A DNA stretch of 64,000 nucleotides, from contig JBNJNM010000006.1 of NCBI GenBank assembly GCA_052426225.1, positions 1,612,001 to 1,676,000 of the forward strand. Reading direction: 5' to 3'. The stretch comes from Zancudomyces culisetae HAW-14-8 (lineage: Eukaryota; Fungi; Kickxellomycota). Below the pieces are notes generated by a model. The model saw only the letters and a program-made list of their open reading frames with translations, did not search any database and was not told the DNA's origin. Positions within the stretch are counted from its first letter, which is position 1. The number at the start of each line of letters is the position of its first letter. A program made the translations under genes and the position numbers. This document shows, piece after piece, positions 19,911-62,766 of this stretch.

Positions 19911-22900
19911 ATGGATAAATATTTTGGTGGTGTAGACGTAACCAAGTGCCACTACAAGGAAGGGTGGGGCCCATTTGGTGGGTATGAAAACCTCGACTTT
20001 ACACTGTGCTTTGAATACTTGGCTATCTTATTACCACTACAGCTGATATTTATTTTCATCGGGTATCTAAGTATAAGGGAGCTGAGAAGACAATCGACGC
20101 AAATACAACTACAGAGAAATTCGAAAGCATTTCTCACAAAAAAAATCCTTGCATCATTTTTGCTGATTCTTAGTATAATAAAGGGAGGGTATATGCTAAA
20201 GTCTAATAAAAAGGTGATAGGTGCCGTGGAACTTATTCAGCTTGTGGAAATAGTGACACTTGTTGTTATTGTAAGACTTCAGCACTTGAGCGATACAAGA
20301 AGTCTGTACTCATCAAAAGTTTTACAATTCTACTGGTTGTTAACCATGCTAGCAAAATTGGTCATGGGACATACAGCGCTTAGACTAGATGGATACAACT
20401 CTGGATATATAAAACTAGCTGCATTGATTTTGGAGGTATTGGTGCCAGGAATATTGTTAAGAAAAGAGATTGTGAAAGGCAGAAACGTGCAGCATTTTTA
20501 TCTGGGAGAATCGGATGATGAAAGTGAGGTTACTGAGGAAAAAGCAGAAATAAGTCCAGAAGACAGTTCAAATATCTTCACAATGCTATCTTTTTCGTGG
20601 ATGTGGCCCCTGATAAATCTAGGGAGCAAGAGAGATCTAAAAAAAGATGACATGTATGCATTACCACAGGAATACCAGACAAAAAACACATCAGATGCCT
20701 TTTGGGGAAATTGGAGTAAAGAAAGAGGAACCGGAAGAAACAATCTGATTATTGCACTGCTAAAAACATACGGGTTTGGATATGGAATTGCAGGTATTTT
20801 GAAGCTAGCATTTGATGTTCTGCAATTTGTTCAGCCAGTTTTGTTGAGAAAATTGATTAATTTTGTAAACTCACAAAATGGTCAAGATGGAATTAGTACT
20901 CAGCCATTTGCATATGGAATATATATATGTGTGGCGATCCTTGTTTCATCAGTAGTTCAAACATTTATACTGCATCAATATTTCAGTATGGCGATGATGA
21001 CAGGAGTGGGTGTGCGAACAGGGCTAAGTACGGCTATATATAAAAAGACAATGAAAATGTCATTGAGTGCGAGTTCCAAGTATACTACAGGGTATATAGT
21101 GAATAGAATGTCGATTGATGCACAAAAGATATCTGACTGCAGCAATTATGGACATATAGTGTGGTCAGCACCAGCACAGATCACAATGGCGATGTACCTG
21201 CTGTTTGATGTACTTGGATGGACCACATGGGTTGGTGTGCTTGTGATGATATTTTCAATTCCAGCAAACACATGGATGACCAAGAAACTGCGAAAGGTGC
21301 AAATGATGAAGATGAAGAATAGAGACAATCGAATGAACCTTATCGAGGAGTCATTGAGTGGAGTTAAGATTCTGAAGCTGTATGCGTGGGAGAATGAGTT
21401 TTTGAACAGGATCAGACATGTGAGAAATACGCTGGAGATTACAACACTCAAGCTGTTTGGGTTGTACCTTAGTTACTCTAATGTTGTGGTGGTGATTGGG
21501 CCATTTTTGGTGGCATTGCTAACGTTTGCGGCATATGCACTGTTTGATGGCGAGTCAAGAGGCCCACTGAACGCCGAACTTATATTTGTATCGCTTGCGC
21601 TGTTTAATTTGTTGAGGTTCCCATTGAGTATGTTGCCATCTGTGATTACTAGTTTGGCCGAGGCGACAGTGGGAGTTGAGCGGATTAAGGAGTATTTGAT
21701 ATGTGAGGAAATTGCGACTGATGGAATCGCCAGGTTTGGATATGACAGAAAAACAGAAAATGGAAAATCCAAGACAAAGACAAAGACGAACTTGGTAGAG
21801 ATTGAAAAAGCAGATTTCTACTGGGATATCAATAGCAACAACGCGATACTGTCGAATGTTAGCATGAAGCTGGAAAATGATGAGTTGATGGCGGTGGTTG
21901 GACGAGTAGGTAGTGGAAAGTCATCGTTGATTTCAGCAATCTTGGGAGAGATGCAGGTTAAGAATGGGAGTGTTACGACTAGGGGAACACTTGCATATGC
22001 AGCACAACAGCCTTGGATTATGAACGCAACAGTGAGAGAAAACATTTTATTTGGGTACAAATACGACAAGAAGTTTTATGAACAAACAATCAAGGCGTGT
22101 GCTTTAGAACCAGATCTGGAGATGATGGCAAACGGAGATCTTACAGAGATAGGAGAGCGAGGAATCAATTTATCAGGAGGACAAAAGGCGAGAATTTCAC
22201 TGGCAAGAGCAGTATACTCACGTGCAGACATATATTTGTTTGACGACCCACTTGCAGCTGTAGATGCACATGTAGGAGAGCATATATTTGAAAATGTTTT
22301 GGGACCAAATGGAATGTTGAAAACAAGATGTAGAGTGCTAGTAACCAACGCAATCCCATATTTGCACCAATGCCATTCTGTAGCGCTTTTGAAGGATGGA
22401 GTATTGGCGGAAGTAGGAAAGTTTGAAGAGCTAAATAAAAGAGAGAATGGATTGTTAAGGGCTTTGGTGAAAGAATTTGGAAAGCACAACGCTGGAGAAT
22501 CAGCACTTTCCAGACAAGCAAGCCAGGTTAATATAGTAGAAAATGGTAATGGTAGTGGAGTTGATTTTTCGGATACTACAACAGTAGTTGGAGCAGATTT
22601 GAGACGATCATCGACATCATCGCTGCCCAGAGCAAGTATTGAAGCACATCTTTCAAGAAAAAACATTATATCATCAGCTGGAAAGTCGAATGAGGACGGA
22701 ACCGGAGGATTGGGGCAGCTAATGACAGTTGAGACATCAGAGACAGGAAAAGTCAAGTTCAGAATATACAAGGAATACATCAAGTCCTGTGGAGTTGTAT
22801 CGGTGTTGATATTTTTGGTATCAATGGTTTTGAACATTGTAGGCACGGTTGGAGGAAATTATTGGCTTAAGCTGTGGACAGACGATAGCGGGGCAGGAGG

Positions 22901-24542
22901 AAACAACAATGTGTATTATCTAACGGGATATGCACTATTTGGAGTCTTTACAGTGGTGTTTGTAAGTGTTAGAACATACGTACTATGGGCAGGATGTGCA
23001 GTTAACAGTGCAAAAATAAGTCATGAAAAAATGCTAGTTAGCGTATTTAACAGTCCAATGTCATTCTTTGATACCACGCCTATTGGAAGACTAATCAACA
23101 GATTCAGTAAAGACCAAAACACTATTGACGAAGAGTTGCCTAGCTCAATTATGTCATGGTTGCAGGTGTTGTTCCAAATGGTTTTCAGTATGGCTGTAAT
23201 AGCCCTCTCTTTACCTCTGTTCCTTATCATTGTTATTCCGCTCTCTTTTGTTTATATATTCCTGCAAAACATATACCTGCAGGTAAGCCGTGATTTGAAG
23301 CGGTTGGATTCAGTCTCAAGGTCGCCAATATATCAACAATTCCAGGAAACCATTGATGGAATCTCAACAATCCGTGCATTCAGACAAAACGGATGGTTCG
23401 TGTATGACAATTTGGATAGAATCGATACCAACCAGAAGGCTGTCTATGCCTATCTAGGCCTTAACAGATGGATAGCTGTGCGACTGGAATTGATGTCTGC
23501 TCTAATGATTTTTGCCATTGCAATCTCAGGTGTCTTTGTCCTCAGCAAAAGCACAAATTCAGCCAAAGCTGCCTCAACCATTGGTTTGTGTATGACGTAC
23601 GCTTTGAATGTCACCCAGTCATTGAATTGGTGTATCAGAATGTACTGCAAAGTCGAAACTGACATTGTATCTCTGGAACGCATTGATGAATATTCTCATC
23701 TTCCTTCAGAAGCACCTTATGTGATAGATGATGCTCGACCTGATCCAGAATGGCCAACCCAAGGAAAAATCGAATTCGTTGATTACAGTCTCAAATATAG
23801 AGCCGAATTACCTGATCGTGTATTAAAAAACATCAATGTAGGTATCAGCCCCAGCGAAAAAGTCGGAGTTGTGGGTCGAACAGGTGCTGGAAAAACCAGT
23901 TTAACCCTAGGCCTTTTCAGAATCATCGAACCATTCGAAGGTCGGATTCTGATTGATGACCTGGATATCACCAAGATTGGACTGTACGATTTGAGATCCA
24001 GAATCTCCATCATTCCCCAAGATCCTGTTCTCTTTTCTGGATCTGTGCGCTTTAATTTGGATCCTACATCCTGCGAAACTCCAAGTAGCCTCGACTCTGC
24101 CAGACGTACCAATACAAGATCCGACGACGATTTATGGCGTGCATTGGAATTGACTGGGCTTAAATCGTATGTTCAGTCATTAGATGGCCAGCTAGATGCA
24201 ACTGTACAGCAAGGCGGTACAAACTTTAGTGTCGGACAGCGCCAGTTGATGTGTCTAGCTAGAGCCTTGGTCAAGAACTCCCGCGTCATTGTCATGGACG
24301 AAGCTACTGCCGCCATCGACCCTGAGACTGATAACTTGATCCAGAATTTGATTCGCTCCCAGTTTAAAGAAAACACAATTATCACTATTGCCCATCGTCT
24401 AAACACAGTCATGGATTCCGATCGGATTTTGGTATTATCAAAGGGCCAAGTTGTCGAATTTGACAAACCTGCCACTCTTTTGGAAGACCCCAATGGTGCT
24501 TTCTATGGGTTTGTAAACTCTCAACAACACAGTTCTGAATAA
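19911..24542 (+). CDS. YCF1: ABCC/MRP-family ABC transporter (Ycf1-like), ~1543 aa, intronless
   Basis: TMD0 (WGPFG..DFTLCFE), NBD1 (GRVGSGKSS, LSGGQKARISLARAVY, LFDDPLAAVDAH), NBD2 (GRTGAGKTS, FSVGQRQL, MDEATA, TIAHRLNT). First ATG at 19911. Confidence 0.9.
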   Translation: MDKYFGGVDVTKCHYKEGWGPFGGYENLDFTLCFEYLAILLPLQLIFIFIGYLSIRELRRQSTQIQLQRNSKAFLTKKILASFLLILSIIKGGYMLKSNKKVIGAVELIQLVEIVTLVVIVRLQHLSDTRSLYSSKVLQFYWLLTMLAKLVMGHTALRLDGYNSGYIKLAALILEVLVPGILLRKEIVKGRNVQHFYLGESDDESEVTEEKAEISPEDSSNIFTMLSFSWMWPLINLGSKRDLKKDDMYALPQEYQTKNTSDAFWGNWSKERGTGRNNLIIALLKTYGFGYGIAGILKLAFDVLQFVQPVLLRKLINFVNSQNGQDGISTQPFAYGIYICVAILVSSVVQTFILHQYFSMAMMTGVGVRTGLSTAIYKKTMKMSLSASSKYTTGYIVNRMSIDAQKISDCSNYGHIVWSAPAQITMAMYLLFDVLGWTTWVGVLVMIFSIPANTWMTKKLRKVQMMKMKNRDNRMNLIEESLSGVKILKLYAWENEFLNRIRHVRNTLEITTLKLFGLYLSYSNVVVVIGPFLVALLTFAAYALFDGESRGPLNAELIFVSLALFNLLRFPLSMLPSVITSLAEATVGVERIKEYLICEEIATDGIARFGYDRKTENGKSKTKTKTNLVEIEKADFYWDINSNNAILSNVSMKLENDELMAVVGRVGSGKSSLISAILGEMQVKNGSVTTRGTLAYAAQQPWIMNATVRENILFGYKYDKKFYEQTIKACALEPDLEMMANGDLTEIGERGINLSGGQKARISLARAVYSRADIYLFDDPLAAVDAHVGEHIFENVLGPNGMLKTRCRVLVTNAIPYLHQCHSVALLKDGVLAEVGKFEELNKRENGLLRALVKEFGKHNAGESALSRQASQVNIVENGNGSGVDFSDTTTVVGADLRRSSTSSLPRASIEAHLSRKNIISSAGKSNEDGTGGLGQLMTVETSETGKVKFRIYKEYIKSCGVVSVLIFLVSMVLNIVGTVGGNYWLKLWTDDSGAGGNNNVYYLTGYALFGVFTVVFVSVRTYVLWAGCAVNSAKISHEKMLVSVFNSPMSFFDTTPIGRLINRFSKDQNTIDEELPSSIMSWLQVLFQMVFSMAVIALSLPLFLIIVIPLSFVYIFLQNIYLQVSRDLKRLDSVSRSPIYQQFQETIDGISTIRAFRQNGWFVYDNLDRIDTNQKAVYAYLGLNRWIAVRLELMSALMIFAIAISGVFVLSKSTNSAKAASTIGLCMTYALNVTQSLNWCIRMYCKVETDIVSLERIDEYSHLPSEAPYVIDDARPDPEWPTQGKIEFVDYSLKYRAELPDRVLKNINVGISPSEKVGVVGRTGAGKTSLTLGLFRIIEPFEGRILIDDLDITKIGLYDLRSRISIIPQDPVLFSGSVRFNLDPTSCETPSSLDSARRTNTRSDDDLWRALELTGLKSYVQSLDGQLDATVQQGGTNFSVGQRQLMCLARALVKNSRVIVMDEATAAIDPETDNLIQNLIRSQFKENTIITIAHRLNTVMDSDRILVLSKGQVVEFDKPATLLEDPNGAFYGFVNSQQHSSE

Positions 24543-24743
24543 ACCAATACATCTGTATGTTTATTTACGTAAATATATTTTATCTTTTTCCTTTCGTTTC
24601 CTTTCTTTTGCTTTCCTTTCTTTATTTATTTTTTTTAAGCAAACGACTAGTTAAATGAATAAACTCTAATTAAATTGAAATGAAATACATCTATATAACC
24701 AACAACAAAAATATATATATAAGTTAAAAAATAAAAATGATAA

Positions 24744-25766
24744 TTAGATGAAATAGTGCTTTCCAGGCCCCGCCATCATACCATTTGTCCCTGGGTCACC
24801 TCTCAATCCGTCGCTACCAGCAGCACCGCCAGCAGCTCCTCCCAACATCCTACCATCATTAGGGAATATCTGTTCTTTATCTGGCACAGCTTGGAAAATT
24901 TGAAAGTTATCATCATTGACACAATCGGCGCCTCCCGATTCGACCCGCATAATGCTGGCCACATTTCCACACCGGTAACAATAGTTTGGTGCTGACCATA
25001 CAGTCACAAGGTTTCTTGCTCTAAACATAAACCGATACCCTTCCTGCACCAGCTGATGGGCTCTAGCTATCAACGAAAGGTTGTTGACATAGTTGAATTC
25101 TTCAGTTACTTTTGAACCAAACAGCCACCCTGCTCCTCTTGGCGATACTGCCCATCCATCAATATCCTCAGGATCTGACCACATCAAATCGCAAAACGGC
25201 CCTTCGTGCGGCACCTCTATACACCGCTGGATAGTTCGGATCTGGTCAAGCGTTCGCAAGTCTGGTGATAATCCACCATGTACACACAGTATTTTCCCAT
25301 CAATTACTGCTGCTATGGTTAGATAGTCAAATACCGAACAACAATATCGCCATACATTTGCGTTTCCATATTTGACCTGTACCTCATCATAAAAGCCATA
25401 CACCTGTGTAATCTGCCGACTTTCGTGGTTCCCTCTTAGCAATGTTATTCTGTCTGGATACATTAGCTTGAGACACATTAGCAGCGTAAACGTTTCCAAA
25501 CTATAATACCCACGATCTACAAAATCTCCCATAAATATATAGCTAGTTTGTTCGATCTGCCCTCCAACTCTGAACAATTTCAATAGATCGTAGAACTGTC
25601 CGTGAATATCTCCACATACCGTTACTGGTGAAGATACTGGTTGTACATTGGATTCCTCCATCAACAATTCCTTCACCATATCGCATAGTTTCTTCATTTG
25701 CTTTTCGGTCAAACATTTACAATTCTGTACTGTTTCTAACCACTCCTTTGGCGTTCCTAGCGACAT
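24744..25766 (-). CDS. SIT4: Ser/Thr protein phosphatase PP6/Sit4 catalytic subunit, 340 aa
   Basis: [57 protein letters not shown]. The GAGWLFG and LVQEG variants are PP6/Sit4-type. Confidence 0.92.
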
Positions 25767-28700
25767 TTTTGTTATTATTACTATTTATTTATTTTTTTGT
25801 TCGCTTTAACTTTTACACGGAAATATTTTCGTGTTCAGAATTCTAAATCCAAATTATCTTTTGCCTATTCGAATCTATGTCGTTCCTTTTTTTTTCTCTC
25901 TCTCTCTTTTGATCTCTGTCTTTTATTCAGATCACTTTGTATTATACAAATATTTGCAGGTCTTTGTTTTCGTTTTTGTTTATCGTTTCGTAGTACTTTT
26001 TCCAAAATTTTGTTTGATCTAAAACTTTCATGTAGAAAAATAAAAAGAAAAACTTGTAATTAATCAAATGAATTCGTTTCTTTCTATTATATTTTTTGTA
26101 TTAGTATAGTACAATAAGGAATCTTTTTATCTAGACAACCCGTTGTTTTTTATTTTGCTTTTGAAACTATATTCCAGCACATGTTTAGTACATTTAGCTG
26201 CCATTTAAAAAAAAATATAAAAAGTAAAAAATAAAAATCTAGCTGAATAATTCATTTTTTCATCATTATTCAATTCCCTCCCCCTTTTTTTTTCCTCCCT
26301 CATTTATTTTTATTTTTATTTTTATTTTTACTTTTATTATTTTATTTTTTGTCAATTTCGCCTGTTATTCAATTAGTTTTTAATGTGATAAAAAAATTCA
26401 AAATCCACTAATTATTCTAGGCACTTTTTTTTTTTTGCGTACTATTTAGACTATCCAATTAATCAACGCATTGATAGTAAAAAAATTATTCCTTGCATTT
26501 TTAGTTTTTCATCAATTATCCTTCAAGTAGTATAATTTTATGTCATCTACTTTTATCATTCAAATATATCCATGCCGTTCTTATGCTCTTGCAATCCTTT
26601 CTTTTTTTTTTTTTCCAATTTTGTCATTGCTGAAGGGTTTTAGGTAAACTTCAACTTTTACAATTAGCGTTTTTACTTTATTAAAATTACCTCCAAATTA
26701 AAATAAAAAAACCTTGCACTTTAAATTCGCAGTTAATGACATAGTAAAAGTAACAGACTTGAATATTACTAAAAAATAAAATTTCCTCCCTCCCTCCCCC
26801 CCTACTAACCATCAACCACCAACCTGCCAACGACCCATCCCAAGTTAAATATACAAAAGTATATACGTTTATTTATTTTTGGTATGTGTACAATATTTGA
26901 CAGCCTTTACTTTTACAAACCTGCTAATAATACTGAAGTTTGATCCCAATCACCATATCCTTATAAAATTATTAGATTGTGGAAAAAAAGTGCTTGAAAT
27001 CTAGCTGTGGCAAGAAAATAAGGAAGAAGGGGGGGGAGGACGGGAGGACGGGAGGGGTACGTCTAACAGACTTAGCAACCCCATTCACGTAGATAAACTC
27101 ATCAATTACCAATACCTCCCCCCCCTCCCCCCCTCCTCCCCGCCATCGCTTTCTTCAATGTATACTTGGGACAAAATATTTTTAAATGCTTTTTCTCTTC
27201 ATTTACGTTACTCTGACTCTTTCCAAGACCTTTTTTTTCAGCAAAAAAAAAAAAAAAAAGAACGGAGAAATATAGTGAATATCTTTTTATAAGGCCATTA
27301 AAACAAGTTTTGTATGCCCTTTTTTTCTTTTCTCTTGTAGTCTGGTTTTGTATATTCTCAACTGTTTTAAATAGCTGAAGTTTATGCTTATCAACTGATG
27401 AGTATTCGTCTTTCCTAATTATCAACCCAAACTTTACCTCTCTCACCTCTCATTCATTGTCCACCAAGATAACAGCATTATACAAGTGTTTATCCATTCA
27501 CTCCAAATCTGAACTATATAAAAATAAAACGGGAGGGGAGGGGGTGGGGGTGTGTTTAACAAAATGTCGACTTGTGTTGTAAATTATAGATCCAAGTATA
27601 TTGCGTCAAGACATCAAATCATACTTGTAAGTACATGTATTAAATTATTATTACTATTTTTTATTTACTGATTCCATAATGAATCGTAATACTACTAGCA
27701 CCGCAAAGCGATATCTATTTGTTTTTACTTTTTACTCATTCATTCATTCATTTATTCATTTATTCATTTATTCATCGACATACTTAATCTAGAAACTAGA
27801 AATCATTGACTATTTAATGTTAGCAAACAAGGGAGAAAAAGAAGGTCAACTGGAGAAATAATCACTTTTCTATTATTTTCAATTTCTACTCAGACCGAAA
27901 TGCTGGGGGGATCAGATAAAAGTATGCAGGCCCAATGTAATGGAGGAAAACCGTTTCTCGTTCTGTGTTTACAAAAAAAAGGGGGAGTAAGAGAGTAAAA
28001 AGATACCATTGATAAAATCCAAATGTAAAAACCATGCTGTTCTTAAACTATGAATGTAACTTACAATAAAAAAAGGGGGAGATGGAGCAGGGGTAGGCAG
28101 TGGGTGATAGGAAGTGGAGAAGAAAATCAATATGTAAATCACAAGTATGTCAATTTCCCATTCATATGGATAGGAAGGAAGAGGATATAAATTGGCTATA
28201 GTGTTGTTAATATCATATTCATATTCATATTCATATTCATTTCTTTTTTTTTATTACTAACTTTTGGAGCAAAACAAAAAAGAATAATCACACTAAACAA
28301 CATGTACAAATATGGTGGAATAAATTAAGGCCAAATTGGGATATATTGGTAAGACTTTTATTTTTTATATATTTTTTCTGTGAGTGTTTTTATTTTGTAA
28401 AATCTGGTAAAGGACAACATTGAAGATTGACAATAAGTGTATTATTGTTTTTATGTCCAGTATATCTCTACAAACTGGTCATAAAAAGTCAAAATTTATA
28501 AATCCATAAATTTATAAATTGGTGATACTATTATTTTTTTGGAGAACAAGGAAAAATTATGAAACCAAAAAATAAAATAAAATACACTAACGTTACTAAT
28601 TCGTGTTGCGGCTTTTACTGTATCTATTTTTTTAATTTCTTTTCAATTTCTTTTCTTAACTAACTATATACCTACATAATCTTTAACTTATTAACTACTA

Positions 28701-29885: not shown

Positions 29886-31119
29886 ATGTCAACAATAATA
29901 AAATCAGGCGAAATACACCTCAAGGAAACGTGGTCTTGGGCAAAACGGTGGGGTACGCTACGAACGCACACGCTTTCCTTTTACAAAAGTGAGTTCTCGG
30001 CACAAATTGCGCTTTTGATATATCTGAAGGATATTTTAGGCGTAAAACGATCCGAATTAAAGACGTATTGTATTGAAATCGAGTCGAAGGATAGAATATA
30101 CTATTTGCAATGCAAAAACGACAATGATTTATATTCGTGGTTGGATGCAATATATGAGGTAGGTATTTGTAATATTCTATGTTTATTACTTTTTTCTTCT
30201 ATTTATTTTCAAGGACAGGCAGCACCAAGTGGTACGAGTAGGACTTTTGAACAGAAACAAATAATTCAGTAGTAAAAAAAAAGATAATAAAAAAGTAATG
30301 TGTTGTAAAATTCTTGTGGTTCTTAGAACAGCCCAGCCTTGACAAATGTGTCTACACCGTCAAACTTTTACCACAAGGTACATGTAGACTTTGACCCCGA
30401 AAGTGGAGCGTTTACTGTAAGTACTTCAGAACTTTTTTTAATATATTTTGTATACAAACAGACAATAAAACACAAAACATTTATAATTATAAATATACTG
30501 TTTCAAAACATAATAGGGATTGCCTAATCAATGGAAGCAACTACTACAAACATCGAACATTACTAAGCAGGATTATGAGCATGACCCACAAGCAGTGCTG
30601 GACGTTCTTGAATTTTATACTAAAAACAACGAAGTTATAAAGGAAGGGAGATACGAGGATATTTTCCAACCAGAAGCCGAGAAACAAAATGTAACTACCA
30701 GCGGGAAAACAAATGGAAGTGCAGCCATAGACACAACGAGTAAAAACGATAACGGTGCAAACGAGCTAGAGATGAGGAAGGCGAAACAACAGCTTGAACA
30801 ACTGCGAAAATTCCAACAATTCCAAAAACAACAAAGCCTGCAGTCATCATCACCGATTCCTGGCGATATAAAAAGCGAAGTTGACAAGAGAATAGAAAAA
30901 GTAAAACAAGATATAGTTAAGGGCGAGGGAGCCAGATCTCCGCCGCAGATGGGAAATGAACTTCCAAGAAAACCCAGCGTTCCCAAGAAGCCAGAAAACA
31001 ATACTTTTGTCACCAAGAAAAAGGAGGCATTTGATTTACTTGTAGATAAGATAGAAAAGGCAAAAATCAGTGCAAAAAAGACTGAGCAGAAACAACAGCA
31101 AAAGCCACAACAACAACAA

Positions 31120-31151
<32 letters not shown>

Positions 31152-32046
31152 AACTAGACTGTCCTTGCTTGGAGAGGCACAGATTATGGAAAAATTGGCA
31201 GAACTAGTATCCAAAGAAGATCCTAAAAGTCTATATTCCAAAGTAAAGAAAATAGGTCAGGGTGCATCAGGAAGTGTATATTTGGCCAAATCATTGCGAA
31301 ATAAACGACAGGTGGCTATCAAACAGATGGATTTGAAAAAACAACCCCGGAAGGAGCTGCTAGTTAACGAAATCCAGGTTATGCGCGGTTCGCAGCACCA
31401 AAACATTGTCAACTATATTGAATCATTTTTGATTACTAGGACAGAACTCTGGGTTGTGATGGAATACATGAATGGCGGTGCGCTTACTGATGTCATTGAG
31501 AACAATCGACTCAGCGAAATGCAAATGGCCACAATCTCGGCTGAGGTCTGCAAAGGGCTGGATCATCTACACAGCCAGAGCATCATCCATCGTGACATCA
31601 AGTCCGACAACATTCTGCTGGGCGAAGATGGTCAAGTTAAAATCACCGACTTTGGATTTTGTGCAAGGCTTTCTGAGCAGCGAAACAAGCGCGCCACAAT
31701 GGTGGGCACGCCTTACTGGATGGCGCCTGAAGTAGTAAAACAGAAACCATACGGATTCAAAGTCGATGTATGGTCATTAGGAATTATGGTTATCGAGATG
31801 ATTGAGTCTGAACCTCCATACCTTGACGAAGAGCCTCTCAAGGCGCTATACCTAATAGCTAGCAACGGCACGCCAACTCTAAAGAATCCAGGGGCTTTAA
31901 GTCTGGAAATCAAATCGTTTTTGGCCGAATGTTTGACCGTCGACGTTGACAGCCGCGCCACAATCTCTGAGCTTTTGCATCACAGCTTTATTTCAAAGCT
32001 TTCTAGACCTTCTTCTATTTTAATTCCTTTATTACTCTCAAAATAA
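29886..32046 (+). CDS. CLA4: Cla4/Skm1-like PAK kinase (PH, CRIB, kinase), ~630 aa; exons 29886-30158, 30327-30416, 30517-32046
   Basis: PH domain (WAKRWGTLR..LYSWLDAIY), CRIB (VSTPSNFYHKVHVDFD..FTGLPNQW), kinase (GQGASGSV, HRDIKSDN, DFGFCA, KRATMVGTPYWMAPE). Both introns phase 0. Confidence 0.93.
31108..31152 (+). repeat. (CAA)n(CAG)n polyglutamine tract in CLA4
   Basis: Directly visible; encodes 15 consecutive Gln. Confidence 0.95.
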
Positions 32047-32101
32047 TTACAATCCTCTTTATACTATCGTTGCTATAAAATTTATTTAAACAAATGTAAA
32101 A

Positions 32102-33509
32102 TTATTGGTGGCTAGAGTTGGTTAAAAACAATCCGTTTTTATACATGTGTTGGTGATGTGCAACGTTGTTTCCAAATGCGCTAAAGCTGCTAACCGGAAA
32201 ACTGCTTGTCCCGAATTCCCCTGTACACGTAACCCACCCAAACTTCTCCTTAAATGCCGATATCGCTGGAACAAATGCATGGTAGCACCCACTGTCTGAT
32301 GCAAGACTAAGCATACTATTATTAATTTCATTTTTCATTATTATTTTCCACCGTCTTTGTTTGTATTATCTCTTTACTCAACAAAAATAAAAATAAAATT
32401 TTTAAAATACTTACCTTTTTTCCCATTCTGCAACTACCGACTGTCCCAAAAAGTGCCCGCTTTCTATCCATGCTGCCGATGCAACAATCGCCTTTAACCA
32501 CCCATCTGCCATATGCCTTATTGAATCTGTTCTTATCCAGTTCATCCCCTCTTCCCCACTGCCTTGGTGGCCCTCCTTCTGCTCCCACCTTGGCATCCTA
32601 CACACTATTGTTGTGGCTTGTATTAACAGCATAAACCACTCTGATGGATGTGATAACGTTGGAAGAGGTTGGTATGGTCGTGCTGTGACACTTCCTGCCC
32701 CCCTAGCCCCTTCCCTTTCTTCTTCCCTTCGTGTTTCTCTTGAAGTTAATCCCGTTTGGCTATAATAATCCATATATCGCACTATTGTATTGTGCAGTTC
32801 CATGAGCGCTGGTCGAACTCTATTAAATGTATATTCATCAAACACTGGCCCATTTTTGTTGTATGGAAGTAGATTCTGTACTTTATTCTCTAATTTCTCT
32901 AATTGCTCTATTGCCCGCTCCACCGAAGGTGCTGGTAACAGTTCCCTAACCGTACTCTTTAGTCCCTCGTTTTTTTCTACCATTTTTATTATCATTTGCA
33001 CCAACTCTCCTTTGTCTAGACTCTCTATGCTTCGTTTCAAAATATAATCCTCCTCCTCTTTCTCATTTCTCTCAACATTTATTATAACGCCCTTGTGTCT
33101 TTTCCTAATACTCCTAGTATCTACTGCTTGGTATTCGTGGTTTTCTTTCCTGTTTCCTACATCTAGTACCTCCTCATCCATGCTTACATCTTCTGAACTT
33201 AATCTCCTTTTATTCTCTATGTTTTATTAATTCATTTTTTAAAATCAATGTCTGCTTTTGTTTGTTACATTTTTAACTACATTTCTTCACAATCACCATC
33301 TCACTGACGGGATGCTGGTAAATCATCTATCTATCTATCCGTGTATCTATATATATATACGTACTCTTACTATGTTTTTTTTCTGCTTCATGGTATTCCA
33401 TGGGTTTTTCTCCAGAAAAGGCACTCGCAGTTTGTAGAAAGCCGCTCCCCTCAATTGGTGCCAATATCCCCGCTCCCCATTTTGCCTCCTGTCTCTTTCC
33501 GTACCCCAT
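32102..33509 (-). CDS. STS1: Sts1/Cut8 nuclear proteasome tethering factor, ~384 aa; exons 33509-33371, 33216-32415, 32315-32102
   Basis: LKRSIESLDKGELVQMI..LPAPSV..LPY..DEYTFNRVRPALMEL, HPSEWF, and C-terminal FGW. Basic KNKRR NLS-like patch. Intron phases (1 and 2) are consistent. Confidence 0.85.
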
Positions 33510-34481
33510 GTTCTTCTTGGGGGTTTTTTTTTCTTCTGGGTTATGTAGTATTAATCTTTTAAATTGACGAGTTACCAAAATTTAACAATATAATACCATT
33601 TGCGTTTTTTGATATTTTTATTTATATAGCCTTTTGATAATTTTATATTTATGACGTATTGTAAAAAAAAAAAACACGACCTTGAACTAGTTTTTTTTTC
33701 TTCATTTTGCACATACTTTACTTTTTACACTTACTTGAGAAATGGGCTATACAAAACTAATAAAAAAAATTTTTATAACTACATCTTTCGCACACCCGGA
33801 TCCCCCCCCCTCATTTTTCCTCAACGGCCTCACTCTCCCACTCTGCTGCTCCCATAATCTCACAATCTCACAATCTCATAATTCCCCTCCCCCTCTTCTC
33901 TCCACCACTTGTTCGTTTCGTTACCAACTGTGAAAAATTGGGATGCATGTTTATTGGCGTCTTAAAATCCGTGTTCATAGTTTGCTTGTTTTTCCAAAGA
34001 TTTTTGAATGAATTGTGGTGTTCGTGGCCACTGAACATAAATATAATTTTCTGAGGGGGGTTTTTTTTCCTTTTGATAGTGCCCATTTTTACCAAAAGGT
34101 AAAATCAAAAATAATGATATAAAAGTGATATTCCGTTTTTACTGGCTTCAATGGACGTTATAAATATAGTAGAAATTCGTCATCATATCCCAATTGGCCG
34201 AGGTCGATATGCGGAAAAAGCTTTTCCTTTCGCTAGCAATTCTGCTTTTACGTGAAACCTACCAAAAAAAAAACAGTTAGACTTGTTCTTATTTTTTGCA
34301 TTTACTCGTTTTGTAGAGAATCCGGAAAGTATGGCTGTCATAGCAAGTAACATTGTGCATATTGCGTACATTTTTCCGCTTTTCCAGTTTGGCCAGAGTG
34401 CAACTAGCCTTACTGTTATTTTCATACAAGTATTCCATTTACCATTGGCGATACATGTCATAGCAAATGTGTACACGCCCT

Positions 34482-51000: not shown

Positions 51001-52208
<1,208 letters not shown>

Positions 52209-57769: not shown

Positions 57770-60700
57770 ATGGCAAGGGATGGAAGAAGACATGAGGAGG
57801 ACGAAGAGGACGAAGATGTCATACGGTACAATAATGACGAGGAAGAGGAAGAAGAAGGGGATTATTCTGATACCGAGAGAATAGATGAGGAAGAAGAGGA
57901 GGATCTTGAGGATGAGGAGGCAGGGGAAGAGGAGCTCCGAAAAAGCGGGTTTATAGTGGATGATGAGGAAAATGAAAGTGAGGAGGATAGAGAGGATAGA
58001 GAGCGTAGAAGAGAGGAGAGAAAGCGCAGGCGAGAGGAGAGGAGGAGATTACGAAGAGAAAATCAAGGTAAGTAAAGAGAGCATGTCTGTTGCTACTAGT
58101 GTTTGAAAATATTTGAAGAATGGGTAAATCTAGAAATGAAATCATATTCAAAGATTTGAAATGTAAAATAATAGAGAGAGAAAGGGAAGATGAGGAACTG
58201 GATGAAGATGATCTAGAACTAGTTCAAGAAAACACAGGGATTCGCGTGATGCACGGAGATAAAGGAGGGAGAAGATTGCTGAGAAGAGGCAAGAAGAAAG
58301 TAGAGAGTGACAATAGTGAAGGAGAAGAGGAGAATGAAAGAAAACTGAAGCGAAAAAGGGTGAGAGAGGAAGACGAAGAGGAAGTTGAGGAGGATGAAGA
58401 GGATGGAGGAGGGAGGATGCGCAGGGGCGCTCGTGAAAGGAGGGGAAGTGACGACGAAGAGTACGGAAGGGGACGGGGTAGAGGTAGGCGAGAGGATTTG
58501 GGCTTATTTGATGACGAAGAGGAAGAGGAAGATGATAGGGAAGATGAGCGCAGAAGAAGGGGCAGAGAGGACGCGAGAAGGCAAAGAGGAAGAAGGGAGC
58601 GACGGGAGGAAGGGTTGGAAGATTTTATTGAAGATGAGAGTGAGGGAGAAGAAGGGGGAAGGGAGAGAGAAAGAGAGAGACCAAAGAGGGGGAGAGCAGA
58701 CTGGGGAGGATTTGGAGATGAGATAATGGAGGGGCTTGATGAAGATACAATGTATGATCTGTTGGAAATATTTGGCGATGGCACAGAGTATGATTTTGCA
58801 ATGGAGGAGCGAAGACCAGAGGATGAGGTAGTAGAAAAAGAAGGGATATTGGATAGAGTATTTGAGCCAGCAGAAATTGAGGCCAAGATGTTGACAACTA
58901 AAGATGAAGAAATTAGGGTTACAGATTGTCCCGAGCGGCTGCAAGAACGAGGATCAGGAGCCCAGATATATAGAAGAGAGCTGAGTGATGAAGAGATCGA
59001 GGAAGAGACAACATGGATACTGAGACAGCTGAATAGAAAGAGTGAAGGAGAGCATTATCAAGGACCCAGCCGAGCGATTATGGGGCACGAACGATTCTTG
59101 GCAGCAGTGTTATCAGTGCTGAAGCTGATGAGTCAAGAGTTTATGGAGGTGCCATTTATATATACACATCGAAAGGATTTGTTTGAAACGTCAGAATCAG
59201 GGGATGGAGAACAAGTAAGGGAGTGGCTTACACAGAGGGATTTGTGGATGCTTTATGACATGGATACGCAGTTTAGAGGGATTTTAGCCAAGCGATTGGA
59301 GTTGATGGCACAGGTGGCACGGGTGGTGAATGCTGGAGAGTGGAGCGGAGAGGATAAGGAGTATTTAGTACAGATGTTGGATGTGGCGATTGACACGGAG
59401 GAGTTGGTGGATCTGGAGGATTGGGTACAAAGTACGTTCCGACATGTTCTAGAGGGTAACGGAGGAGCAAGACAGGCATCGATGTACAAAAAACCAACGC
59501 AAAGTCAGCGGGCAAAGGGAGTGGAAAACAGTAAAATCCGAGGATTTGTAAAAGATGAGATGGGTATTACAGCACGCGAGTTTGGATATAATCTGCAAGG
59601 ATTAGGTCGACATTTTGTAGACGACAGTGAGGTGCAACTAGTGCCAGAGGAGCGGATTGCACAATTTGTAGAACAAAACCCAGAGCTGGGTAGCGACAAG
59701 ATAGTGATGCAGCAGATAGAGGAAAGCTTTGCACGGACGTTGGCGATGGAACCAAACGTCAGAAAGTATGTACGAACAAAGCTGAGCAGAGAAGGACATA
59801 TAAGAGTGAGGCCTACAGCAAAAGGAGAGGTGGAGATTAGAGGAAGAGACCATAGTTATTATGCGTTCAAGTATTTGAAACCCAAACCAGTACGGGAATT
59901 TGCAAAGACAGTGCAATTCCTGCAGATCTTGAAGGCGGAAAATGAAGGGCTGCTGAGCTATGGACTGACATTGGATCCTCATAGACGATTCAAGGCAGAG
60001 AAAGGTGGAGAGGGGCAAACAGAGGAAGGGGAGGAGGAGGAGAAGAGTTGGGCGGCAGAGCGAAGCAATGTAGTGGAGACATTGGTGCGAGGGATGCAGG
60101 TGCATTTGTGCTCAGACTCGGTACATGAGGCAGCAGAAGGGTGGAATGCGCTGCGAGTTAGGAGTCTGCGGCATGCAGTTTTGCGGTATTTAATACCAAT
60201 GTCACAAAAGTGGTTGATAGACAAGTTGCGGGTAGAGGCAGAAACATACGTGAGCGAGCAGTGCGGTCGAGAGTTGGCAGCACATATAGATGTACAGCCA
60301 CTACGAACCAGCCGGATGAGTGTTAACGACACTCCAAGAGTTGTGGTGGTTGTGGGAGGAGGGTTTGGTATAGGAAGAGGAGCGATTAGAATAGTGTTTA
60401 TAGATGACCATGGGAGATATGTAGAGCATCGAGTTGCAGATACGCTGCGAGGAATGGCAAATGATATGTCAGGCAACAACATGCGGTATGATGGATCTGA
60501 GGACCTGCGGCTGATTCTGGAGAGAAGACAGCCAGACGTAGTTGCGGTTGCTGGAATGGAACCATCGACTTTTCGACTCCTGGAAGATGTAAAGCGGATT
60601 ACTGAAAACCACACCGCGCTTACCAGTGATGAGATTCATGTAACACTAGCACCAGACAGACTGGCCAGGCTATATTACAACAGCGAAAGAGCAATGCAAG

Positions 60701-62766
60701 AGTTTCCTCACTTGTCAGCAGCCGAACGATATGCAATGAGTGTTGGTAGATGCTTGCAGGATGTATTGGCAGAGTATGTAGCAGCAGACAGAGAGTTGTT
60801 GGGGCTTTTGCTGCATCGGTCCCAACGATTGGTTCCGGTGGATCGACGGTGGGCGTTTCTGGAGCGCGAGTTGATTATTGCTGTAAATGCAGCAGGAGTC
60901 AACATCAATGATATTGCTCAGAGCCCACACAAGCAAAAGACGTTGTCGTATGTGTGTGGATTGGGGCCACGCAAGGCCCAGCTGATATTAAATGCACTAT
61001 CTGGACCAGCTGGAACGTCGCTGATCGAGTCACGAAGCGATCTTATCTACCGAGAACTGGTAACCAAAAATATATTTGTCAATTGCGCATCGTTTCTGCG
61101 AGTTTGGCCAGCCCAAAGCGATATTTTAGATAGCACCCGAATCCACCCCGAAGATTATGATTTGGCTCGCAAAATGGCGGCTGATGCATTAGATGTTGAA
61201 GATGACGATGACGATGATCACAACTACTCGCGCAACCGGAGAAAGTATGACGATGGGCCATCTAGGTATGTCGCTGAGGTTATGAAACGAGCACCCGAAA
61301 AGCTAGATGATCTGATTCTGAGTGAATACGCCATGGAATTGGAAAAACGACTGTCTGTATCAAAGCTGTTTTGTCTGCGGTTTATCAAGCGCGAGTTACA
61401 ACATCCCTATGCCGATTCCCGCCATATTTACCGCGATCCTGACCCCAAGGACGTCTTTGAGATGCTGAGTGGCGAGTCGATTGGCGATACTTTGCGTGAG
61501 GATGGTTCGACAATAGTCGTGGCCCAGGTAGCACGCATTCGCGACAAATTTGCCATTGCTCGACTGGATTCGGGCATCGACGGGTTCCTTAATGTTGCCA
61601 ACATTGATGATCGTCGCGTTGATGTTGTTTCAGATGAGTTGAGTGTTGGCGAGACCATTACTGCCGTTGTAAAGAAAATTGATTTCGATAAGCTTACTGT
61701 TGATCTGTCCACCAAGCCATCTGATCTCCAGGCCGCCAAGGCTGTTCTCGATCAACCACCACAGGACTTTTTTGATCGCTACTTTGACTTTGAGGCTGAC
61801 AGTATCTGTCGCTCCAAAAACAATTTGGAAAAGCAGATTTCGCAGATGATGCAGCGGTCCATTCCACATCCATTGTTTAAACAGTTCAACAGTCGCCAGG
61901 CCGAGAAGTTCCTTCAGCGTCGTAAAGTTGGCGAATGTGTTATCAGGCCATCGTCCTTGGGTCACAGCTACCTTACCATTACTTGGAAAATTGCGCCCGG
62001 ACTGTACCATCACATTAGTGTGCAGGAATCCGACAAGCCCAACAATAACGAGCTGGCTCTAGGCCGGCTTCTGATGGTACGCAATCAAAAGTTTTCGGAT
62101 CTTGATGAATTGCTAGGTGTATATCTGGACCCATTGATTCGGAAGTTTGAGGAGGCGAGACGTTATCCCAAGTTTTACAATCCCGATACAGATCCTTCAT
62201 ACCGCCATCAATCGTTTTCACACCCAGAGCAACCGGCTGATCCTGATCCTTCCGATCCAAACGAGTCTGCACAAGCAATGCAGGACCGTTTGGCTCGCCA
62301 CGCTAAGCGGTATGTGTCACGAATTGAGCGGCATCTAGACAATGCAAGTCGGGCAACTGGAACTGGCAGTTATTTGCTAGCCTTGGATTATGAAAACCCT
62401 GGGTGTTTGGCCATCCATTTCAAACCCAATCCCAAAGCTGCGCTTGTCAAAAAATGGGTTATAAAAGTTCGTCCTAATGAGTTTTGCCTGGGTGATCGTG
62501 GTAGATATCCAAATGTTGGTACTCTAATCAATGGATTCAAAACTATTGCTGCTAATATTTCTTCTGCAAACCAAAACTCTGCTCCTACTAGACCTTTCCA
62601 ACAACTTTCTTCTCATTATAATCATCCACCACCACCTCCTCCTCCACCTTCTCAACATCAACAGCAACATCAACAGCACCATCATAATTACCATCATCAA
62701 CCACCGCCACCGCCACCTCCTCATACTGCACCTTATCCTTCTTATTACCACCACCACCAACAATAA
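57770..62766 (+). CDS. SPT6: Transcription elongation factor / histone chaperone Spt6, ~1629 aa; exons 57770-58067, 58175-62766
   Basis: Acidic N-terminus (GFIVDD, LDEDDLELV, IFGDGTEY), VFEPAEI..DEEIRVTDCPERLQ, EVPFIYTHRKD, YVCGLGPRKA, LDSTRIHPEDYDLARKMAADAL, S1 domain, tandem SH2 (IRPSSLG..LTITWK). Confidence 0.96.
62610..62763 (+). repeat. Low-complexity Pro/His/Gln trinucleotide repeats at the SPT6 C-terminus
   Basis: CCA/CCT/CAT/CAC/CAA runs. Confidence 0.85.

What the first reader, a model, noticed from the sequence alone, without database searches (positions are those of the whole stretch)
19911..25766. Purine-to-pyrimidine skew flips inside genes and rewrites synonymous codon usage (clearest in YCF1)
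Seen: the + strand is A/G-rich through the first ~3 kb of YCF1 and turns C/T-rich from about 23.2 kb, well before the stop, staying so through the convergent SIT4. As an internal control I counted homologous motifs by hand. Four-fold codons around the NBD1 signature/Walker B (~22167-22268) end in a purine 15/18 times; the equivalent NBD2 stretch (~24222-24323) ends in a pyrimidine 14/16 times. The flip lies near the midpoint between the YCF1 and SIT4 promoters, not at the gene boundary. Inference: a strong strand-asymmetric mutational process radiating from promoter/intergenic DNA, such as fixed, closely spaced replication origins with forks meeting mid-gene, or promoter-distance-dependent damage or repair. 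Ordinary codon selection or uniform transcription-coupled skew would not reverse sign within one ORF.
Basis: partly seen in the sequence, partly recalled or inferred. Interest (0 to 1): 0.8.

Follow-up and report, generated by a model that had tools for sequence, protein, structure and literature searches.

The report
Purine skew flipping inside fungal genes
In this insect-gut fungus, one DNA strand switches abruptly from purine-rich to pyrimidine-rich near the middle of long pairs of genes that face each other, which points to an unusually strong, position-fixed bias in mutation or repair that rewrites codon use and may mark where recombination or replication tracts end.

Summary
Real and recurrent. 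In YCF1, four-fold sites are 75% purine before about 23.1 kb and 35% after 23.7 kb (p about 1e-16 after controlling for amino acid). In 264 kb of this contig about 11 such flips occur, one per ~17 kb of non-transposon DNA. Each is sharp (mostly under 0.9 kb), lies inside an ORF, has no motif, and 9 of 11 fall in convergent blocks. The promoter midpoint predicts the flip far better than the gene boundary. The bias is mainly in transversions, is context-free, shows in non-coding DNA, and is absent in genes away from flips. YCF1 and SPT6 orthologs in related fungi lack it. The genome is probably Zancudomyces culisetae. Best guess (0.35): repair or recombination tracts start at promoters, move with transcription and stop at a fixed cohesin/axis-like site. 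No experimental data test this. Intragenic skew reversal is known in yeasts, but with opposite sign and GC only. The scan noted the same pattern on other DNA of this genome (11 unchecked notes).

The parts
19911..24542 (+). YCF1/ABCC-type transporter, one ORF of 1543 codons; carries the flip
   Evidence: Pfam TMD0_ABC, ABC_membrane x2, ABC_tran x2; best hits are Harpellales YCF1 at 48-52% identity
19200..23086 (+). Purine-rich domain on the + strand (four-fold purine fraction about 0.75), fading within about 1 kb upstream of the ATG without changing sign
23086..23661 (.). Flip zone (best point 23361); no shared sequence motif
   Evidence: change-point fit; k-mer test
23661..26800 (-). Mirror domain: purine-rich on the - strand, covering the last 0.9 kb of YCF1, SIT4 and about 1 kb upstream of SIT4
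24744..25766 (-).
   Evidence: Pfam Metallophos; four-fold purine fraction 0.81/0.83/0.68 on its coding strand
58120..62766 (+). SPT6: second strong flip in the window at 61045 (CI 60820-61270), convergent with a BIN3 methyltransferase
30517..33542 (.). PAK kinase / Cut8 convergent pair with a weaker flip near 31942

Best explanation
Shown: a neutral strand bias, mostly in transversions, makes the strand that runs 5'-3' toward a fixed site purine-rich on both sides of that site. It forms a plateau of about 73% purine at four-fold positions for 2.5-4 kb, fades about 1 kb beyond the flanking promoters and does not reverse there. The sites lie inside ORFs near the middle of long (over 3 kb) convergent blocks, about one per 17 kb. 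Inferred (class of mechanism, about 0.7): strand-specific DNA tracts begin in promoter or intergenic DNA, extend mainly in the direction of transcription and stop at a positionally stable meeting site. Inferred (specific identity, 0.35): these are recombination or break-repair tracts. Breaks form at promoters; repair synthesis or heteroduplex is carried 1-4 kb with transcription to a cohesin/axis-like site. The purine gain would arise because purine:purine mismatches are corrected to the donor while pyrimidine:pyrimidine mismatches are poorly corrected, or because polymerases insert purines opposite unrepaired lesions.
For: Shape: plateau 0.71-0.75 from 0.2 to 2.5 kb on each side; plateau-to-promoter predicts non-coding DNA best (221-223 vs 179 units). 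Sharp flips. Four-fold sites far from flips have no skew (GC -0.01, AT +0.05) against +0.46/+0.39 toward and -0.35/-0.25 past a flip; two-fold sites barely move, so mainly transversions; no 5' or 3' context preference. Absent from orthologs in four Smittium species, Furculomyces and Coemansia. Transposon ORFs keep their own flat composition, and the pyrimidine-rich tail resumes beyond the insert downstream of one flip. Analogy in S. cerevisiae: 774 axis sites, motif-independent, at convergent genes (PMC4530585); recombination intermediates migrate 1-4 kb with transcription and pile up in the 3' end of the weaker gene (bioRxiv 10.64898/2026.03.13.711646). Spo11-like and six MutS-family genes are present. 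GC at four-fold sites is slightly higher near flips (0.40 vs 0.35). Poor repair of C:C mismatches and the A-rule are from my own knowledge, not checked here.
Against: No break, cohesin, polymorphism or RNA data (no sequencing runs were listed). In yeast 94.6% of axis peaks lie within 250 bp of a stop codon, whereas most of these flips are 0.6-2.7 kb from the nearest stop. Biased conversion needs frequent heterozygosity, unknown in this fungus. With one shared amplitude, a point source at the flip fits four-fold sites better (307) than promoter tracts with a barrier (271). Several long convergent pairs show nothing and two flips lie in genes without a convergent partner. Gene models and promoters are ORF-based proxies on 264 kb of one contig.
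Confidence: 0.35

Rival explanations
1. Replication forks enter from origins in flanking intergenic DNA and terminate at a fixed site or barrier in mid-block; the leading strand becomes purine-rich.
For: Plateau within genes, midpoint rule and co-orientation of genes with the inferred forks. Barrier models gain 235-271 units. Some yeast termination sites carry skew jumps (PMC3459929).
Against: No mirror domain upstream of promoters. Without a fixed barrier, the model needs initiation every 1-2 kb or less. Yeast origin jumps are about 9% and decay over about 20 kb, against about 80% and 3-5 kb here. An N-shaped inter-flip profile fits worse (230 vs 289).
Confidence: 0.22
2. The flip itself is the source: an intragenic replication origin or recurrent break site with local error-prone synthesis or lagging-template damage on both flanks.
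For: Sharpest feature of the profile. Best single-amplitude fit (307) and best free fit (351-363). GC polarity matches yeast, where the leading strand is C-rich. Human origins leave local kb-scale mutational footprints (PMC9645720).
Against: Plateau rather than decay inside blocks, and a drop tied to promoters. No motif. Position is predicted by promoter geometry. AT polarity is opposite to yeast. Efficient origins inside ORFs, head-on to both genes, are unusual (own knowledge).
Confidence: 0.2
3. Transcription-coupled asymmetry with long antisense read-through: the neighbour's polymerase dominates the 3' part of the long gene.
For: Domains begin near promoters and follow transcription direction. 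All genes show a mild pyrimidine shift in their last 300 bp (0.43).
Against: Genes away from flips have no skew, and the strand term falls to about 0 once midpoints are modelled. BIN3 itself is neutral while the SPT6 3' end is strongly flipped.
Confidence: 0.15
4. Selection on codons, RNA structure or purine loading.
For: Amino-acid composition co-varies with the domains (E/G/R-rich vs P/S-rich).
Against: Same sign in non-coding DNA, mirror symmetry across strands, all codon families move together, and orthologs of the same proteins lack it.
Confidence: 0.05

Closest known systems
Opposite GC skews at gene 5' and 3' ends in unicellular fungi (McLean and Tirosh 2011, PMC3315797)
   Same: Skew changes sign within genes, affects four-fold sites, UTRs and amino-acid use.
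   Different: There: C-rich 5', G-rich 3', AT skew flat, a per-gene gradient. Here: opposite sign, AT flips with GC, a sharp step, set by neighbour geometry, and strong only at some loci. Several Smittium/Furculomyces orthologs are C-rich at the 5' end as in that paper.
Candida albicans centromeric skew jumps (discussed in PMC3459929)
   Same: Very large jump (74% GC skew) returning to baseline in about 3 kb; judged there not to be replication-linked.
   Different: One per chromosome at centromeres; here about one per 17 kb inside ORFs. Polarity not compared.
Replication-origin skews (yeast ARS; human N-domains; CpG-island bidirectional asymmetry, PMC2817419)
   Same: Strand-mirrored skew around fixed points, independent of gene strand.
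   Different: About 9% amplitude and about 20 kb decay in yeast, sharp step at intergenic origins; here about 80%, 3-5 kb, sharp step inside genes.
Meiotic cohesin/axis sites and transcription-driven migration of recombination intermediates in S. cerevisiae (PMC4530585; bioRxiv 10.64898/2026.03.13.711646)
   Same: Convergent genes, no motif, about 15 kb spacing, 1-4 kb travel from promoters, displacement into one gene's 3' end.
   Different: I found no compositional footprint in the passages read; yeast peaks sit close to stop codons; nothing is mapped in this fungus.
Purine/pyrimidine skew at mammalian recombination hotspots (from memory, Smagulova 2011; paper not held)
   Same: Purine/pyrimidine rather than keto skew tied to recombination.
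   Different: Recalled as weak and centred on the break; unverified lead only.

Membership tests
McLean-Tirosh intragenic GC-skew gradient | Sign change of GC skew within genes, including four-fold sites | tested here: met
McLean-Tirosh intragenic GC-skew gradient | C-rich 5' end, G-rich 3' end | tested here: not met
   Opposite: +0.46 then -0.35
McLean-Tirosh intragenic GC-skew gradient | AT skew uniform along genes | tested here: not met
   AT skew +0.39 to -0.25
Replication-origin skew (N-domain type) | Near-linear decline between successive jumps over tens of kb | tested here: not met
   Decay 3-5 kb; N-shape 230 vs 289 units
Replication-origin skew (N-domain type) | Signal in non-coding DNA and independent of gene strand | tested here: met
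Replication-origin skew (N-domain type) | Jump coincides with mapped origins or termini | not testable with these tools
   No replication maps available
   Same sign for 2 kb upstream; reversal lowers the fit
Uniform transcription-coupled skew | Coding-strand skew in most genes, constant sign | tested here: not met
   GC -0.01, AT +0.05 far from flips
Cohesin/axis-bounded recombination tracts | Sites at convergent genes, without a motif, about 15 kb apart | tested here: met
   9 of 11 in convergent intervals, 11 per 191.5 kb, no motif
Cohesin/axis-bounded recombination tracts | Peak within about 250 bp of stop codons | tested here: not met
   Ten of 11 flips lie 0.6-2.7 kb from the host gene's stop
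Cohesin/axis-bounded recombination tracts | Promoter breaks and cohesin binding at the site | not testable with these tools
   Needs ChIP and break maps; a Spo11-like gene is present

The most novel reading that the evidence does not exclude
This lineage has a strand-asymmetric, transversion-specific conversion or repair bias strong enough to write its recombination tracts and cohesin/axis sites into the genome at sub-kilobase resolution, resetting codon use and shifting amino-acid composition inside single ORFs: a purine-biased counterpart of GC-biased gene conversion.
Probability: 0.2. Interest if true: 0.85.

Novelty: new variant of a known kind. Interest (0 to 1): 0.62.

Why it matters
The four-fold GC-skew step (about 0.8 pooled over flips) is roughly nine times the yeast origin signal and is placed to within a few hundred bases. 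The positions of a chromosomal process (tract ends, origins or termini) can therefore be read from sequence alone in a culturable fungus and tested directly. It also breaks the uniform-mutation assumption behind codon-selection, dN/dS and phylogenetic models for this genome, since two halves of one ORF have mirror-image neutral compositions.

Tried and rejected
Amino-acid composition as cause: rejected (CMH; orthologs). Fixed distance from a gene's own stop: rejected for strong flips (short partners stay purine-rich to their ends; flips 0.1-2.7 kb from stops), though a mild general 3' shift exists. Cytosine deamination alone: rejected, since C and T fall together and two-fold sites barely move. 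POLE-like context signature: not seen. Motif at flips: none beyond chance with about 10,000 k-mers tested per length. Loss of repair genes: MutS x6, one MutL hit, Pol alpha/delta/epsilon, a partial Pol zeta-like hit, UDG, three HhH-GPD and ORC2 are present. Y-family polymerases gave one weak hit and no REV1_C or IMS_C match: inconclusive, as introns and divergence can hide them. Non-synonymous drift against relatives: right direction but small numbers (33:17 left, 20:25 right). Sequencing runs: none was listed, so no RNA or polymorphism test. Literature search for Harpellales skew returned no relevant title.

Full report
Setting. The window is contig C6:1,612,001-1,676,000 of a 27.09 Mb, 25-contig assembly. 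The closest YCF1 and SPT6 relatives are Harpellales (Smittium, Furculomyces) at about 50% identity. Size and contig number agree with the PacBio HiFi assembly of Zancudomyces culisetae (27,184,066 bp, 26 contigs; PMC12611240). The species name is an inference. I analysed the window plus 100 kb on each side (264 kb). Genes were called from open frames with an amino-acid score, so promoters are proxies.

Observation. In YCF1, four-fold sites are 337 purine to 115 pyrimidine left of 23086 and 46 to 87 right of 23661. All eight codon families move the same way (CMH p 1e-16). The flip fits at 23361 (CI 23086-23661). SPT6 shows the same at 61045. Over the 264 kb, about 11 purine-to-pyrimidine steps occur in 191.5 kb of non-transposon DNA. 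The strong ones go from 0.71-0.81 to 0.09-0.41 purine with logistic widths of 100-200 bp; one is broad.

Anatomy. (1) Mirror symmetry: purine domains read A .45, G .31, T .16, C .08 and pyrimidine domains T .40, C .28, A .23, G .10. (2) Four-fold sites on the strand pointing toward a flip have GC skew +0.46 and AT skew +0.39; past the flip, -0.35 and -0.25; more than 6 kb away, -0.01 and +0.05. There is thus almost no ordinary transcription skew in this sample. (3) Two-fold sites shift little and no neighbouring base stands out, so the bias is mainly transversional and context-free. (4) Non-coding DNA carries the same sign at about half the amplitude. (5) Inside a block the signal is a plateau of 0.71-0.75 from 0.2 to 2.5 kb. 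It fades about 1 kb beyond the flanking ATGs and does not reverse. (6) Nine of 11 flips lie in convergent intervals. A step at the ATG midpoint gains 120 log-likelihood units against 44 for the gene boundary; convergent blocks under 3 kb show nothing. Geometry-only models reach about 130-140 units, against about 300-350 once flip positions are fitted, so strength is locus-specific. (7) No motif marks the flips. (8) Retrotransposon ORFs have flat compositions of their own. (9) YCF1 orthologs from four Smittium species, Furculomyces and Coemansia, and SPT6 orthologs from three Smittium species and Furculomyces, lack the pattern; several are C-rich at the 5' end, the usual fungal direction. This comparison covers two genes only.

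Mechanism. Points 1-4 and 9 show a neutral strand asymmetry rather than protein- or codon-level selection. Which process is not shown. Yeast origin jumps are about 9% and decay over about 20 kb (PMC3459929). A point source at the flip gives the best simple fit to four-fold sites but does not explain the plateau or its tie to promoters. Antisense read-through does not explain neutral genes elsewhere, or neutral BIN3 next to a flipped SPT6 end. The geometry resembles what is described in S. cerevisiae meiosis: motif-independent cohesin/axis sites at convergent genes, 774 per genome, toward which recombination intermediates travel 1-4 kb with transcription and collect in the 3' end of the weaker gene. 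If purine:purine mismatches in such tracts are corrected to the donor while pyrimidine:pyrimidine mismatches are not (own knowledge of poor C:C repair), the strand running away from a promoter break gains purines by transversion only, which is the observed polarity. Purine insertion opposite lesions during repair synthesis would do the same. I put this at 0.35, terminating forks at 0.22, a source at the flip at 0.20, antisense transcription at 0.15 and selection at 0.05. The yeast axis criterion of lying within 250 bp of a stop is not met, so this is a 'works like', not a membership claim.

Comparison and novelty. Sign reversal within fungal genes is known (PMC3315797), but with opposite polarity, flat AT skew and a gradual per-gene form. 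The nearest match in size and range is the C. albicans centromere jump (74%, 3 kb), which occurs once per chromosome. I found no paper describing this pattern in Harpellales or as purine skew at convergent genes; the library lacks most subscription journals. Other first readers of this scan noted the same pattern elsewhere in this genome. These notes are unchecked and suggest only that it is genome-wide; I tested one contig. Verdict: a real, strong, apparently lineage-specific new variant of strand-asymmetric composition, mechanism open and directly testable. Interest 0.62.

Noticed in passing
G000:C10:1370943-1375550 (-): Second copy of YCF1 at 100% amino-acid identity: segmental duplication or uncollapsed haplotype.
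   Followed up: no
G000:C24:1922-115494: Five identical-scoring family-B DNA polymerase genes (701-aa frame) about 26-35 kb apart, two on + then three on -: a repeated element, linear plasmid or virus-like unit, or an assembly concatemer. Observed only.
   Followed up: no
G000:C6:429372-429854 (-): Only one weak Y-family polymerase hit; no REV1_C or IMS_C match genome-wide. Possible loss or strong divergence of translesion polymerases; inconclusive.
   Followed up: partly
G000:C21:596466-596705 (+): Only one partial MutL-domain (PF01119) hit against six MutS-family loci.
   Followed up: no
L003, L015-L018 (C6 about 1.536-1.541 Mb and 1.718-1.752 Mb): Two groups of retrotransposon-like ORFs with uniform but opposite four-fold purine content (about 0.60 and about 0.38) and near-identical repeats (99-100%), so young insertions.
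   Followed up: partly
window 51237-52208 (+): GAPDH-like gene is pyrimidine-ending throughout with a strong C preference at two-fold sites (0.84): ordinary translational selection, distinct from the flips.
   Followed up: partly
L027, L029: A PAK/STE20 kinase lies near SPT6 in Furculomyces and Smittium simulii, and YCF1 and SPT6 share a contig in S. simulii, as in this window: loose conserved synteny.
   Followed up: no
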